64,000 nucleotides of DNA from Oikopleura dioica (taxonomy: Eukaryota > Animalia > Chordata). Every line of letters begins with the position of its first letter. Position 1 is the first letter of the stretch. The notes beneath the pieces were generated by a model. It saw nothing but the letters and a program-made list of their open reading frames with translations, made no database searches and was not told where the DNA came from. A program made the position numbers and the translations under genes. Shown here in pieces: positions 15,368 through 61,553 of this stretch. Where the stretch lies: the NCBI GenBank assembly GCA_907165135.1, contig OU015567.1, positions 10,416,001-10,480,000 of the forward strand, given 5' to 3'.

Positions 15368-15867
15368 NNNNNNNNNNNNNNNNNNNNNNNNNNNNNNNNN
15401 NNNNNNNNNNNNNNNNNNNNNNNNNNNNNNNNNNNNNNNNNNNNNNNNNNNNNNNNNNNNNNNNNNNNNNNNNNNNNNNNNNNNNNNNNNNNNNNNNNNN
15501 NNNNNNNNNNNNNNNNNNNNNNNNNNNNNNNNNNNNNNNNNNNNNNNNNNNNNNNNNNNNNNNNNNNNNNNNNNNNNNNNNNNNNNNNNNNNNNNNNNNN
15601 NNNNNNNNNNNNNNNNNNNNNNNNNNNNNNNNNNNNNNNNNNNNNNNNNNNNNNNNNNNNNNNNNNNNNNNNNNNNNNNNNNNNNNNNNNNNNNNNNNNN
15701 NNNNNNNNNNNNNNNNNNNNNNNNNNNNNNNNNNNNNNNNNNNNNNNNNNNNNNNNNNNNNNNNNNNNNNNNNNNNNNNNNNNNNNNNNNNNNNNNNNNN
15801 NNNNNNNNNNNNNNNNNNNNNNNNNNNNNNNNNNNNNNNNNNNNNNNNNNNNNNNNNNNNNNNNNNN
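15368..15867. other. Assembly gap (500 N)
   Basis: Run of N. Confidence 1.
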
Positions 15868-38785: not shown

Positions 38786-39285
38786 NNNNNNNNNNNNNNN
38801 NNNNNNNNNNNNNNNNNNNNNNNNNNNNNNNNNNNNNNNNNNNNNNNNNNNNNNNNNNNNNNNNNNNNNNNNNNNNNNNNNNNNNNNNNNNNNNNNNNNN
38901 NNNNNNNNNNNNNNNNNNNNNNNNNNNNNNNNNNNNNNNNNNNNNNNNNNNNNNNNNNNNNNNNNNNNNNNNNNNNNNNNNNNNNNNNNNNNNNNNNNNN
39001 NNNNNNNNNNNNNNNNNNNNNNNNNNNNNNNNNNNNNNNNNNNNNNNNNNNNNNNNNNNNNNNNNNNNNNNNNNNNNNNNNNNNNNNNNNNNNNNNNNNN
39101 NNNNNNNNNNNNNNNNNNNNNNNNNNNNNNNNNNNNNNNNNNNNNNNNNNNNNNNNNNNNNNNNNNNNNNNNNNNNNNNNNNNNNNNNNNNNNNNNNNNN
39201 NNNNNNNNNNNNNNNNNNNNNNNNNNNNNNNNNNNNNNNNNNNNNNNNNNNNNNNNNNNNNNNNNNNNNNNNNNNNNNNNNNNNN
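38786..39285. other. Assembly gap (500 N)
   Basis: Run of N. Confidence 1.
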
Positions 39286-57813: not shown

Positions 57814-58160
57814 TCAACTTCTGACAGAGGATACAAGATTTAATTCGGGATGAAGGATTCTTCCTTTTTCATTCCAGAAAACCCAGATAAACAATTTTGG
57901 AGATACTAATATAGTCCTCGTGATGAAAGAATTATTGACGTTCGCGACGAAATCCTTGAGTTCAAGAGCGACGTGTGCGTCGACGTCCTCATAAATCATG
58001 AAGAATCCAATGAGATTTTCCTCTAACGCACGACCGCAGTCCTCTGTTTGCCCTGGGAATTGATTTACCGTCTGTTCTCTTGAAAACTTTCAGACCCGAA
58101 TCTACTAGAGTGGTTTTGCGCAATAAAGGATTCATCTGGGCCCTCAAAAGGAAAAGTACT
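57814..58160 (-). CDS. Hypothetical small protein downstream of KIFAP3
   Basis: Protein-like frame ...EENLIGFFMIYEDVDAHVALELKDF...; start not found. Confidence 0.3.
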
Positions 58161-58285
58161 CCAGGTGAAAGTTTTTTAATTCGATTTTATCCTTTATTTG
58201 AGCTCTAAAAAACAAGACAACATTTATGAAAGTAGAAAAATAGAAAATTTAGTTTCGAGAAAAGGCTTCGTCGGTGAATTTGATT

Positions 58286-61200
58286 TTATCGGTAGTCGTG
58301 GGCCATCATTCCGTCATTGTACCATCCTGGATCTGCAGAGTTTTCCCTAATTGGCAAGAACGTAAGCGAAGAACTCGAAAGAAGAGCTTACCATCTCGAC
58401 TGGGGTCTAAAATCAGGATAAAAGTCCGGGGGCATTTGCTGATCTTCATCGTCCATGAAATACTCATCGTTGTCGTAAAGAAGCAGATCTGCCGGATGTC
58501 CATATTCTTCTTCTTCGTACGCTAGAGCTCCTTCTTGTGGCCCCTCAATCATTTCCAGCCATTGCGAATTATGCCACCGGAATTTTTCGAGTCTGACAGA
58601 GGGTTCCATAGGAATTACGTTTTGGTTACAGTCTCTTTTTATAAAAGGAATAAATTTATCGCCAGACCTCATAAAATTCATTCCTACAAATTTGATGCTC
58701 TGAAGGAGCAAAATCATGAAAACAATTGTTAAAATTTCAAGTCTGAAACCCGTTCCCTGACTTTTTCGCTCCATCCTTTGTCGAATTCTGAAATGATATC
58801 AAGCGTTGAGTCGCAGACAGCCCTAAAAACCTTCAATTCCATACAAATGAGAAGATACTAACCGAACTTGCGCGTTCGAATCATGCATAAGATCGACAAG
58901 ATATGCGGGCGCTGTCGTTGCCAGAAATTGGTCCCGGGTGACTTGATGAAAGGCAAGTTGGTAGAAGACATAGACGATCTGAAAGAGCGTTGATGGCGGT
59001 TAAAATATATTGAAAGAGAAGTTCTGTCGTCATCATCTGCGACAATTTTTAGCTTTCCGTCTCTAGCGCATAAATGCGCTATCCAAAATGATGCAATCAA
59101 ATTTCCGAAAAATAAAGTCGGCGACCTGTTCTCTCTTTACCTGGCAGACCATTTCGTCGTCTTCCTGTTTGGCTTTCAACAAATCTATCAGAATCTGTAC
59201 AAAGTTTTCTTTTCCTAAGAGCTTGGCGCATTGATCGTCCATTGCGGCGGTGCCAGTCAAAAGAACTGCTTCAAGTACAATATCGTCCGGAAGAGTAGTG
59301 TTCGTATCTAAAGAAGTATTATTGGAGAGACTTCCGAAGAGGGTCGGATTAGAATGGAAACCTCTTCACAAATAGCCATTATCAAATTTACTCTAAAAGG
59401 GGTGTGAGAAAAGAGCATGTGAGCCAACAAACGGTCTTACCCAGAGCATTTTTAAGCCATGTAACGAGATCGTATTCTTGAAGTACCAGGTTGTAATCGA
59501 TATTAGGCAGATTCAAGTTAGCAAGTGTTCCGATACATTCAATGGCAAAAGACTCGTCTGTTGATTGACAGTTGGACGCAATATTTCCAATATACGGCAG
59601 CATGGCTTCTTTGCAGCCCGTCTCATGAATAGACAGATTTCGGATAGCCTGAAGAAACAGTTTTAGACCTGAATAAACCGGGCAAATCTGCGAACTTATT
59701 GTCTGGGATTGTTGTCTTACTTTCAAAATTAATGCGTCTTTGGTTTTGAGCCCGCGTTTAATCAAGGACTTCAGCGTTTTTCCTTTGTTGTGTTTGAGTA
59801 ATAATTCAGCATTCGCCGGCGACAGTGCACAATTGATCAGCAAAGCTGACAGCTCCAGTGGAACCTCTCCGCGATCGTTTAGAACCTGGGTCACTAAGAG
59901 AGGAAACGCATCAGTGTATGAAAGTTGATTTCTTGGCTTTTCGTCCTTGGAGATTTGGTATAAAAGACATCTTGCGACTTGTCTTTGCGGAGTTGTTTCT
60001 ATTGCGGAAGCTAGTTTTGCTATCGGTGGTATTAGATGAGAGGCAGCAATCTGCGCCCTAAAGACTTTTAATTCCCTCCCTCTTAATTATTGCTTACAAA
60101 CCTTATCACCTTATCAAACGATAGATTCATCAATAGTCTGAGTGTTAGGTTAAGCGTGTCATTCGCTTTCGGATCACTGACAATCGGCAAAACGGCTCCC
60201 GCTACTTTTTGTTTCTTCATTTCGTCCTTGTTTTCCTTGAAAACGCTCATTCTTTGTAGCATCGAAAGAGCCAAGATCAAGACTGGCTCGGCTTGCCGGG
60301 TGATGATCACTTCCACAAGCGTTTTGATGATGCCCTTTATCCGCATTTTGAATTGGACATCTGGGTTTTCTGATAAATTCAAGAGCAAGTACAGCCCAAT
60401 CCGTAGTAATCCATCTTGCTTTCTTATTAAAGTTCGGTATCTTTTTTGTAGCTTCCTGAAGTCATCGGCGTCGCGGGACTTCTTCGTTGTGTCAAGTTCG
60501 GATTTCCATTTTTTCGCTCGTTTGAGTTCTTCTTCTATAATTGTCATACAAAGAGCCCCGATTTTGAAATGAGCAACGACTTGATGAAATTGACTGAAGT
60601 TGGAGAAGCAAAAGAAAATGTAGAGAATGTCTGAATTCGGAATGAGCGGCTTTTTGGGTGACATATATGACAAGAGACCGGATTACGGTTGGGATTTTGA
60701 AGTCGAGACTGCGATCAAAGAATTAAAACACTTTCACCTCTGTAGTCTCTATAAATAATCGAAGCGGTAATCTGAAGAGAATCGCATCAAATTAAAAATC
60801 TGTGACAGTAAAACCTCTGAGAAAACCTACACTAAAGCACCGTTTAGGTTCGTTTTAACGCAAACTAACTGTCATCCCGAATCTGAGCTAAGTTGCATTG
60901 ATTTATTCCAATCTTCTCTTAGAACTCGCGCCAAAGCGGTCAAGACCGTTTCTTTCGTCAACACTTCTTCGAGAAATTCAGGATTTCTTGTAAGTTGCAG
61001 AATCAGCTTGGCTCCGCGCTCTTTATCTTCTATCTCTTCGTACAGTAAATCGATGTAATTGTCAAGATCGTAAATATTCGCTTCTTCTGCATCAGGAGAT
61101 TCAGATAAGGACTTCGTATTGCTCGGACTATTTGATGATGTAACTGGCCTTGTTTGAAGGTAATACAGCAGCTGTTCGATTTCAGGAAGTCTGGTAGGGC

Positions 61201-61553
61201 TAACAAGAGGACATTTGGTAACGATATCCTCTGCCAATTGTCGCACATCGGTGTCCTTGGCAAGGCCTTCCAAGCGAATCACCTTGGTGCACTGACGAGG
61301 CTCAGTGGGAAACTCACGCCCGTTTGACGACAAGAGGATATTTACTTAGGATCGAGGTTCAGTGAGAGAAATAGCTTGATAAAGTGCATAAATTCTTTGA
61401 TGGGGATTTATCGGATACGGATATTGTTCACTAAGCACGAAATAAATTTTAAGAACCACTCCCTTCGTCGTAGTCTATCACAAGAGCGGTCTGAGTTGGA
61501 TGGACGTCCAAAGAGGCGTTTATTACCTCCTTTCTGATTATTCTTTCATCCAT
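58286..61553 (-). CDS. KIFAP3: Kinesin-associated protein 3 (KAP3)
   Basis: LDVHPTQTALVI, IEQLLYYLQ, ARVLREDW, YIFFCFSNFSQFH, LLLNLSE, QEDDEMVCQ, LMHDKN and EKFRWHNSQWLEMI. ATG directly after TTCAG|A. Confidence 0.95.
60635..60882. mobile_element. 248-bp short-TIR element forming a non-canonical KIFAP3 intron
   Basis: TIR ATTCGG(A/G)ATGA (10 of 11 match). Flanking direct repeat CTGA at 60631-60634 and 60883-60886. Confidence 0.7.

What the first reader, a model, noticed from the sequence alone, without database searches (positions are those of the whole stretch)
60631..60886. KIFAP3 intron with no usable GT donor is a TIR element with a 4-bp duplication
Seen in sequence: the conserved segment (K-S-M-Q-L-S-S-D-I-L-Y-I-F-F, aligning gap-free with recalled vertebrate Q-S-V-E-L-A-T-N-I-I-Y-I-F-F) is split by 252 nt. 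An in-frame TGA follows before any GT that would keep the REDW motif. The insert has 11-bp TIRs (ATTCGGRATGA) and is flanked by TCAG repeats, the second of which is the acceptor. Three non-canonical donors are all in frame: AT (precise), GA 6 nt inside the TIR (+2 aa), or GC 6 nt upstream (-2 aa). GA-AG introns are established in Oikopleura. Inference: a second, unrelated element family has created an intron by the same logic (acceptor from TSD, donor at or near the TIR end).
Basis: partly seen in the sequence, partly recalled or inferred. Interest (0 to 1): 0.8.

Follow-up and report, generated by a model that had tools for sequence, protein, structure and literature searches.

The report
Transposon-like intron in Oikopleura KIFAP3
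A 252-base insert with transposon-style ends splits a highly conserved helix of the kinesin-adaptor gene KIFAP3 in some cryptic species of the plankton animal Oikopleura dioica but not in others; it must be spliced out although it has no normal GT start, so it is a good test case, though not a new kind, of jumping DNA becoming an intron.

Summary
On the minus strand, 60635-60882 (248 nt) carries 11-nt inverted ends. It is flanked by TCAG on both sides and splits KIFAP3/KAP3 inside a conserved helix. Removing exactly 252 nt restores the Pfam KAP profile and a spacing that is invariant in 73 of 73 relatives.

The window is O. dioica Okinawa chr2. The public gene model (CAG5112727.1) starts just after this intron, so it is truncated.

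Independent assemblies show the same insert in two sister lineages: about 250 nt in one, and 100 nt with the same ends in the other. The site is empty in a Bergen-type genomic contig and in at least five more distant Oikopleura lineages.

The insert is therefore an old, lineage-restricted intron of insertional origin. It is not an assembly error and not a young transposon. Its ends, the stem they form and the acceptor AG are conserved, while the interior decays.

Two things are not shown:
- **Dispersed copies.** No Oikopleura genome was searchable, so the transposon family is unproven.
- **The donor.** Exact AT-AG excision is my favoured reading.

This scan has already noted similar stem-closed and transposon-like non-GT introns elsewhere in this genome. 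Verdict: new member of a known kind.

The parts
60883..61344 (-). KIFAP3 exon upstream of the insert (…VLREDWNKSMQLSS + G of the Asp codon). Its last four bases TCAG (60886-60883) are direct-repeat copy 1.
   Evidence: Pfam KAP E=2e-41, profile positions 36-184. tblastn against the L015 and OdB3 proteins.
60872..60882 (-). 5' inverted-repeat arm in sense orientation (ATTCGGGATGA). It starts at the first base after the exact-excision boundary.
   Evidence: the repeat finder pair I5. It pairs with the 3' arm in both the MFE and centroid folds. Pairs 2-9 are kept in all lineages.
60635..60882 (-). 248-nt insert body. It is single copy in the window.
   Evidence: BLAST against the window finds only itself. 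Orthologous copies of about 250 nt are in L001/L002 at 91% identity (9.3% divergence in the alignment); a 100-nt version with the same ends is in L005/L006/L137/L139.
60635..60645 (-). 3' inverted-repeat arm in sense orientation (TCATTCCGAAT).
60631..60634 (-). Direct-repeat copy 2 (TCAG). Its AG (60632-60631) is the inferred 3' splice site.
   Evidence: AG is the only part kept in all haplotypes, which read TCAG, TAAG or AAAG. In the L005 type, an in-frame TAA formed by this repeat rules out acceptors further upstream.
60102..60630 (-). KIFAP3 exon downstream (AC of the Asp codon, then ILYIFFCFSNF…DKVIR). The public OKI2018_I69 model g6908 starts inside it at 60547.
   Evidence: Pfam KAP E=1.2e-52, profile positions 186-365. 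P0236 maps at 100% to 60547-60101.
60868..60873 (-). Rival donor GACAGT at +9. It is in frame, splits the TGA stop, and would add Ser-Gly-Tyr.
   Evidence: Read directly from the sequence. The motif is G[A/T]CAGT in all lineages and reads GT in two L005-type contigs only.
61345..61462 (-). Neighbouring intron A. It is GG-AG in the window, and exon end and intron end share AAG.
   Evidence: Colinearity with P0003, P0004 and P0242. The homologous Bergen-type intron is GT-AG at the same site.
58593..58756 (-). Neighbouring intron G. It is GG-AG (or GT-CT, because of a 5-nt GTCAG boundary repeat) and has a 7-bp terminal stem.
   Evidence: The public OKI model skips the exon before it.

Best explanation
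A short DNA element with 11-nt inverted ends inserted into the Asp codon of the KAP3 helix MQLSSD|ILYIFFCFS and duplicated TCAG. This happened in an ancestor of several Oikopleura dioica cryptic lineages. The gene stayed functional because the insert is removed from the pre-mRNA as an intron.

The 3' splice site is the AG of the duplicated TCAG. I take the 5' cut to be flush with the element, giving AT-AG in the Okinawa window and TT-AG in the sister lineage. This removes the element plus one repeat copy and restores the ancestral reading. In the transcript the two inverted ends form an 8-11 bp stem that places the two exon ends side by side. That stem probably substitutes for the missing GT signal.

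Since insertion the interior has decayed, from about 250 nt to 100 nt in one lineage. The ends, the stem and the AG have been kept. The Bergen-type lineage either lost the intron precisely or never had it.

Shown: the anatomy, the orthology, the empty sites, purifying selection on the gene, and the conservation of ends and stem. Inferred: transposon origin, splicing as such, the exact donor, and a role for the stem.
For: Anatomy:
- The inverted repeat and direct repeat sit flush with the only excision that is gap-free against Pfam KAP.

Distribution across lineages:
- Empty sites occur in L007-L010, L011 (exact target AGCTCAGACATT), L013, L014/L136, L015 and Bergen-type L138.
- The same insert is present in L001-L003 and, as a 100-nt form with the same ends, in L005/L006/L137/L139.

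The gene is functional:
- dN/dS is 0.05 for window versus L005 type, with synonymous sites saturated.
- Intron lengths are 252, 254 and 104 nt, and all copies carry in-frame stops. The insert therefore cannot be translated.

Exact excision is favoured:
- The spacing from RVLRED to FFCFS is 20 residues in 73 of 73 KAP3 relatives.
- The site lies mid-helix: H183-197 of a model with mean pLDDT 90.
- The flanking residues MQLSSD/ILYIFF are identical in lineages with and without the insert.
- The three codons that a +9 donor would make coding show two non-synonymous and no synonymous changes.

Stem:
- Pairs 2-9 are kept in all lineages. Pair 7 is G.U, A-U or G-C, and pair 2 is U-A or U.G.
- The terminal duplex is -15.5 kcal/mol (2 of 300 shuffles as good). 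The two GG-AG introns of the same gene give -12.3 and -10.5. The six GT-AG introns give -1.6 to -9.3.

Precedent:
- Transposon-insertion introns are listed for Oikopleura.
- MITE-derived non-canonical introns with TIR and TSD are described in Fritillaria borealis.
Against:
- AT-AG or TT-AG lies outside the documented G[ACG]-AG repertoire of O. dioica. A non-G first base is expected to hinder the second splicing step.
- A 5'ss-like hexamer G[A/T]CAGT lies in frame at +9. Its CAGTT is conserved beyond the stem.
- No second copy of the element was found anywhere, and its ends match no transposon superfamily I can name.
- A 4-nt boundary repeat ending in AG is partly expected from splice-site consensus alone.
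- The whole fold is no more stable than shuffles (z = 0.83).
Confidence: 0.5

Rival explanations
1. Same insertion-derived intron, but spliced conventionally for O. dioica. The donor is the GA at +9 (T|GACAGT, first intron base 60873; GT in some sister-lineage haplotypes) and the acceptor is the AG of the repeat. Nine bases of the inverted end would be exonised, and the protein would gain Ser-Gly-Tyr in the helix.
For: - The donor is in frame and splits the TGA stop.
- G[A/T]CAGT matches 4-5 of 6 positions of GTRAGT and is conserved across saturated divergence. CAGTT is conserved although it lies outside the stem.
- GA-AG is the commonest non-canonical class in O. dioica.
- No haplotype has a stop in the first nine bases.
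Against: - It would break a spacing that is invariant in 73 of 73 relatives, in mid-helix, with no sign of relaxed constraint on the flanks.
- It does not fit the reported GA-AG context AG|GAA.
- GT is a minority allele, seen in 2 contigs, against GA in the other L005-type haplotypes.
- The 5' stem arm would be mostly exonic. In the other non-GT introns examined the 5' arm starts at +2 to +6.
Confidence: 0.3
2. Not a transposon. The intron was gained by another route, such as filler DNA at a repaired double-strand break or intron transposition. The terminal inverted repeat is a splicing stem of the kind that accompanies non-GT introns in this genome. The TCAG repeat reflects microhomology or the AG|…AG| consensus.
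For: - No dispersed copy was found.
- All three non-GT introns of this gene have 3-5 nt boundary repeats and the strongest terminal duplexes. The GT-AG introns have 0-3 nt repeats.
- An unrelated GA-AG intron in another lineage, 5 nt upstream, also has a 9-bp terminal stem.
- Earlier notes of this scan report the same class elsewhere (I did not check them).
Against: - The 11-nt repeat starts at the very first inserted base and ends at the last base before the repeat. That is the geometry of TIR plus TSD, whereas the stems of the other introns are set back by 1-8 nt.
- A stem evolved de novo would not need to be flush with the insert.
- Break-repair gains explain direct repeats but not inverted repeats.
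Confidence: 0.25
3. Artefact or dead gene: an assembly error at the junction, or a KIFAP3 pseudogene disrupted by an insertion.
For: The public Okinawa model omits everything upstream of the insert.
Against: - Seven independent assemblies from different samples carry the same junction.
- Both flanking exons are under strong purifying selection (dN/dS 0.05; 99% amino-acid identity at 7% nucleotide divergence).
- The upstream exons keep intact ORFs that match the KAP profile.
Confidence: 0.02

Closest known systems
MITE-derived non-canonical introns of Fritillaria borealis (Henriet et al. 2019, as summarised in PMC11282704 and PMC13326754)
   Same: Both are in a larvacean tunicate. Both are introns at lineage-specific positions with terminal inverted repeats and a target-site duplication. 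The duplication supplies the 3' splice site, there is no GT start, and the U2-type spliceosome is presumed to remove them because U12 was lost in larvaceans.
   Different: In Fritillaria these are the majority of introns, occur in families, and end mostly AG-AC or AG-AT after a TAC duplication. They are also linked to U2AF paralogues specific to that lineage. Here there is one locus, the ends are AT/TT-AG (if excision is exact), the duplication is TCAG, and no family is known.
Introners (Huff et al. 2016; Gozashti et al. 2022, PMC9860276)
   Same: A DNA-transposon insertion becomes an intron, and a TSD or TIR contributes the splice sites.
   Different: Introners are defined by many near-identical copies in unrelated genes, and they normally bring or create GT-AG sites. 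No second copy was found and there is no GT. Oikopleura is not mentioned in the main text of that survey.
O. dioica non-canonical G[ACG]-AG introns (Denoeud et al. 2010; Frey & Pucker 2020, PMC7072748; Bliznina et al. 2021, PMC8008620)
   Same: Same organism, an AG acceptor, and a lineage-specific position. About 11-12% of introns are non-GT, and transposon insertion is listed as a source of Oikopleura introns.
   Different: The documented class starts with G. Exact excision here starts with A or T. The GA alternatives at +6 and +9 lack the reported AG|GAA context.
Euglenid nonconventional introns
   Same: Variable non-canonical borders, short direct repeats at the boundaries, and a stem that brings the intron ends together.
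   Different: An unrelated organism with an unknown, possibly non-spliceosomal mechanism. This is a resemblance only.
Intron gain at repaired double-strand breaks (Daphnia; Li et al. 2009, listed in PMC3443670)
   Same: A new intron flanked by a short direct repeat.
   Different: That route does not predict inverted repeats flush with the insert.

Membership tests
Cut-and-paste DNA transposon / MITE | Terminal inverted repeats at the exact ends of the insert | tested here: met
   11 nt with 10/11 complementary, flush with the insert
Cut-and-paste DNA transposon / MITE | Target-site duplication, with relatives holding the empty site and a single copy of the target | tested here: met
   TCAG on both sides. 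L011 has AGCTCAGACATT and Bergen-type L138 has AGCTCAGATATT, each uninterrupted. Caveat: a repeat ending in AG is partly expected at any intron.
Cut-and-paste DNA transposon / MITE | Multiple dispersed copies in the genome | tested here: inconclusive
   None in the 64-kb window or in 42 kb of related loci. A possible remnant at 57843-58182 is not significant (7 of 290 controls). An internal 31-mer gave 0 hits in JGI metagenomes. No Oikopleura genome was searchable.
Cut-and-paste DNA transposon / MITE | Ends and TSD length assignable to a known superfamily or an autonomous partner | not tested
   No transposon library was available. From my own knowledge, 4-bp duplications occur in Sola and Ginger (TTAA targets in piggyBac and Kolobok, 3-4 bp in Academ), but ATTCGG ends match none that I can recall.
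Introner | A family of near-identical elements forming introns in many unrelated genes | not testable with these tools
   This needs a whole-genome search of O. dioica assemblies.
Introner | The element or its TSD supplies functional splice sites | tested here: inconclusive
   The acceptor AG comes from the repeat and is conserved. The donor is unknown, there is no GT in the window, and there is no RNA.
O. dioica G[ACG]-AG non-canonical intron | The intron starts with G followed by A, C or G, and ends with AG | tested here: inconclusive
   AG is met. G is met only for the -6 (GC), +6 (GA) and +9 (GA) donors. It is not met for the exact excision that the protein spacing favours.
U12-type AT-AC intron | ATATCC-like 5' end, AC 3' end, and a minor spliceosome present | tested here: not met
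   The 5' end is ATTCGG or TTTCGG and the 3' end is AG. The U12 spliceosome was lost in larvaceans according to PMC13326754.
Fritillaria-type MITE intron | TIR plus TSD at a lineage-specific position, with non-GT/AG ends | tested here: met
Fritillaria-type MITE intron | AG-AC or AG-AT termini after a TAC duplication; family-level copies; divergent U2AF paralogues | tested here: not met
   The termini are AT/TT-AG after TCAG. The paralogues are reported only for the F. borealis lineage. Copies were not found.
Kinesin-associated protein 3 (host gene) | Match to Pfam PF05804 across the exons and colinearity with named KIFAP3 proteins | tested here: met
   Five exon ORFs hit KAP. P0242 is UniProt E4WQM5 'Kinesin-associated protein 3' of O. 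dioica.

The most novel reading that the evidence does not exclude
O. dioica can excise a transposon-derived insert exactly at its ends although the intron starts with A (Okinawa) or T (sister lineage). The cut sites would be set by the 8-11 bp stem made by the element's inverted ends plus the AG of the duplicated target. That is structure-defined splicing of the Fritillaria/euglenid kind operating in Oikopleura, with presence, a shrunken form and absence of the same intron among culturable cryptic species.
Probability: 0.4. Interest if true: 0.7.

Novelty: new member of a known kind. Interest (0 to 1): 0.5.

Why it matters
How new introns arise, and how a spliceosome copes with inserts that lack GT, is an open question. 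Larvaceans are the animal group in which it is most tractable.

This locus offers a natural allelic series in one essential, highly conserved gene:
- a full insert in the Okinawa type;
- a 100-nt remnant with the same ends in a sister lineage;
- an empty site in the Bergen type.

Several of these lineages are kept as laboratory strains. One RNA-seq mapping would settle the donor. A minigene with a broken and then restored stem would test whether inverted transposon ends define splice sites.

There is also a practical result. The public Okinawa gene model CAG5112727.1 is truncated at this intron and skips an exon at a second non-GT intron. Non-canonical introns therefore visibly damage the annotation.

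Tried and rejected
2. **Joined model.** I did not build or search a joined spliced sequence, so that step was left out.
3. **Exhaustive protein search with P0003.** It listed no full-length Oikopleura KAP3 among the representatives. The full-length OdB3 protein and the Okinawa model surfaced only through the third word search and its cluster list.
4. **Transcript-derived ORFs across the junction in insert-bearing lineages.** None turned up in three word searches and two cluster listings. The only full mRNA contig (L140) belongs to the Bergen type, which lacks the intron.
5. **Dispersed copies.**
   - The window BLAST found only the insert itself.
   - A candidate second copy at 57843-58182 (an exact 11-mer plus a collinear 19/20 match) was rejected as not significant.
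   - The internal 31-mer gave 0 metagenome hits.
   - The degenerate end pattern hit more than 120 unrelated contigs.
6. **Interior homology between the 248-nt and 100-nt versions.** It is patchy and no better than shuffles.
7. **Whole-insert RNA structure.** It is no more stable than shuffles, so this is not a fold-back MITE or a structured RNA.
8. **Rooting the lineage tree with this locus.** The AU test cannot place the root (p = 0.43), so 'gain then loss' versus 'single gain' rests on the published species tree.
9. **Papers.** Denoeud 2010 and Henriet 2019 are not held in the library. I used reviews that cite them.
Full report
**What is in the sequence.**
The gene lies on the minus strand.
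- Read in sense, the upstream exon ends …CAA CTT AGC TCA G.
- A 248-nt insert follows (60882 down to 60635). It begins ATTCGGGATGA and ends TCATTCCGAAT.
- A second TCAG follows (60634-60631), and then the exon continues AC ATT CTC TAC….
- The repeat finder reports the two ends as an 11-nt inverted repeat, 91% complementary (pair I5). In sense RNA the single mismatch is a G.U pair.
- Reading through gives SSDSG and a TGA stop.
- Five exon ORFs of the locus hit Pfam KAP (PF05804). The upstream exon ends at profile position 184, and the second residue of the downstream exon sits at 186. Removing exactly 252 nt is therefore gap-free.

**Identity of the DNA.**
- The third word search returned NCBI CAG5112727.1, Oidioi.mRNA.OKI2018_I69.chr2.g6908. 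Its first 149 residues map at 100% to window 60547-60101. The window is therefore Oikopleura dioica, Okinawa assembly, chromosome 2.
- That public model starts at the first ATG after the insert, so it lacks exons 1-2 and 28 codons of exon 3.
- The model also jumps over the small exon that precedes a GG-AG intron. The annotation is broken at both non-GT introns.

**Related DNA.**
Contigs encoding near-identical exon ORFs were fetched. Four states are seen.
1. L001-L003 (7% exon nucleotide divergence from the window) carry an orthologous insert of about 250 nt. It is 91% identical (9.3% divergence in the alignment), which is within the range of the other introns of the gene (2-21%).
2. L005, L006, L137 and L139 (18% exon divergence, synonymous sites saturated, dN/dS 0.05) carry a 100-nt insert at the same site.
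   - The ends are the same: TTTCGGGATG[A/T]CAG … CTGATCCCGAAT.
   - The interior is no longer significantly alignable.
   - The second repeat has decayed to TAAG or AAAG.
3. L138 is a 5.8-kb genomic contig whose protein is nearly identical to the Bergen OdB3 KAP3 (CBY20916.1, UniProt E4WQM5). It has introns A and B but an uninterrupted AGC TCA GAT ATT at this site.
4. More distant Oikopleura lineages (L007-L010, L011/L012, L013, L014/L136, L015) are also empty. L011 holds exactly the predicted target AGCTCAGACATT.

Because seven independent assemblies carry the same non-GT junction, an assembly error is excluded.

**History.**
- Before the Bergen-type contig was known, insert-bearing rows formed one clade against the distant empties (95/97 support).
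- With it added, exon p-distances are Okinawa-L001 0.072, Okinawa-L005 type 0.182, Okinawa-Bergen type 0.201, and L005 type-Bergen type 0.105.
- The published species tree is (Okinawa, (Osaka, Barcelona/Bergen)), with splits near 25 and 7 Mya.
- If the L005 type is the Bergen type's sister, as the distances suggest, the insert predates the common ancestor of the complex. It was then removed precisely in the Bergen type, either by recombination with a spliced cDNA or by deletion between the two TCAG copies.
- This locus alone cannot fix the root (AU p = 0.43 for the alternative), so a single later gain is not excluded.
- Either way the position is young on the scale of Oikopleura and old on the scale of transposon activity. 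This is not a fresh insertion.

**Is it a transposon?**
- In favour: inverted ends flush with the insert, a flanking 4-nt repeat, and empty sites holding a single target. Together these are the classic signature, and the inverted repeat is far beyond chance (about 8e-6 at fixed positions).
- Against over-reading, the repeat: a repeat ending in AG is partly expected at any intron. All three non-GT introns of this gene show 3-5 nt boundary repeats, against 0-3 nt for the six GT-AG introns.
- Against over-reading, the copies: I found no second copy.
  - There is none in the window and none in 42 kb of related loci.
  - A collinear 11-mer plus 19/20 match at 57843-58182 is not significant (7 of 290 control windows score as high).
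- No Oikopleura genome can be searched with these tools, so the family claim is untested. Given the age of the insert, sister copies may have decayed anyway.

**Which donor?**
- The acceptor is well constrained. AG is the only part of the second repeat kept in all haplotypes. In the L005 type the repeat forms an in-frame TAA that excludes acceptors further upstream.
- With that acceptor (phase 1), the in-frame donors before the stop are GC (-6), CA (-3), AT (0), CG (+3), GA (+6) and GA (+9, T|GACAGT).
- Haplotypes, from ORF tails (SSDSG, SSDSE, SSVSG, SSVSGCQFLGF) and contigs:
  - The first base is A in the Okinawa and L001 types and T in all eight L005-type sequences.
  - Base +7 is G or A.
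  - Base +11 is A in most haplotypes and T (making GT) in one of the eight L005-type cluster sequences, the L005/L006 allele.
- For exact excision:
  - The RVLRED-to-FFCFS spacing is 20 residues in 73 of 73 KAP3 relatives.
  - The site is in the middle of helix 183-197 of a confident model (mean pLDDT 90).
  - MQLSSD and ILYIFF are identical in lineages with and without the insert.
  - The nine bases that +9 would make coding show two non-synonymous and no synonymous differences.
- For +9:
  - The hexamer resembles a 5' splice site.
  - It is conserved beyond the stem.
  - It fits the known GA-AG habit of O. dioica, though not its AG|GAA context.
- I put exact excision at about 55%, +9 at about 30%, and the rest at 15%.

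**The stem.**
- The two ends pair in both the minimum-energy and the centroid folds, although the insert as a whole is no more stable than shuffles (z = 0.83).
- Pairs 2-9 survive in every lineage. Pair 7 is G.U, A-U or G-C, and pair 2 is U-A or U.G. The two changes that break pairs are at the helix ends.
- Between the window and the L005 type, the 22 stem bases differ at 4 positions, while the interior is unalignable and synonymous sites are saturated.
- The terminal duplex is -15.5 kcal/mol (2 of 300 shuffles as good). The two GG-AG introns of the gene give -12.3 and -10.5. The six GT-AG introns give -1.6 to -9.3.
- An unrelated 62-nt GA-AG intron, 5 nt upstream in the L136/L014 lineage, also has a 9-bp terminal stem.
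- The numbers are small. They agree with earlier, unchecked notes of this scan that non-GT introns in this genome are closed by terminal stems.

**Comparison with what is known.**
- Transposon insertion is already listed as a source of Oikopleura introns (citing Denoeud 2010, which I could not read).
- In Fritillaria borealis most introns are MITE-derived. They have TIR and TSD and non-GT/AG ends, and they are removed by a U2-type spliceosome, the U12 type having been lost in larvaceans.
- O. dioica has 11-12% non-GT introns, chiefly GA-AG.
- This locus works like a Fritillaria-type or introner-type intron, but it fails or cannot be tested on their defining family-level features. It is not a U12 intron.
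- I file it as a new member of a known kind.

**Limits.**
- The metagenome contigs fetched by the end-pattern scan were screened only for a partner repeat and for similarity to the insert. Seven were read at the match; none was pursued further.

Noticed in passing
window 60101-60547 and 58757-58822: The public Okinawa model g6908 (CAG5112727.1) starts at the first ATG after this intron. It also skips the conserved 22-codon exon (…VCDSTLDIISEFDKGWSEKVR) that precedes the GG-AG intron G. The Bergen protein and a spliced mRNA contig (L140) contain that exon.
   Followed up: partly
window 58593-58756: Intron G starts GG and ends AG, with a 5-nt GTCAG repeat at exon end and intron end. The same mRNA could therefore come from a GT-CT parse. 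It has a 7-bp stem near its ends (GGGUUUC/GGAACCC).
   Followed up: partly
window 61345-61462; L138:2464-2577: Intron A is GG-AG in Okinawa but GT-AG at the homologous site in the Bergen type, so its donor appears to have eroded from T to G. It is absent from the L007 and L015 lineages. A GT lies 3 nt downstream in the same phase but would add a residue.
   Followed up: partly
L136:603-664 (also L014 and P0163): A different Oikopleura lineage has an independent 62-nt GA-AG intron only 5 nt upstream of this site, in the first Ser codon of SSD, with a 9-bp terminal stem. Its closest relative, L011, is empty at both sites. Other lineages have introns after LAR (L013, P0167) and after REDW (P0170). 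This short conserved stretch looks like a hot spot for intron gain.
   Followed up: partly
window 57843-57853 and 58163-58182: An exact copy of the 11-nt end motif and, 320 nt away in the same orientation, a 19/20 match to an internal stretch of the insert. Both lie just downstream of KIFAP3. This could be the remnant of a second copy, but the joint alignment score is reached by 7 of 290 control windows.
   Followed up: yes
window 60110-61344 versus L001: Third codon positions of the two exons flanking the insert differ at 14% and 23% between the window and L001. The insert differs at 9% and intron B at 2%, and the downstream exons are only 2-3% diverged overall. The divergence is uneven, and introns are more conserved than neighbouring synonymous sites.
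   Followed up: no
L061, L064, L057, L079 (metagenome contigs): The end pattern TTCGGGATGACAG also occurs in palindromic repeat units of unrelated, apparently bacterial contigs, with a CATTCCGAA partner about 90-110 nt away in L061 and L064. This is a coincidence of motif and is not related to Oikopleura.
   Followed up: partly
window 15368-15867 and 38786-39285: Two 500-base runs of N (assembly gaps or masked stretches).
   Followed up: no
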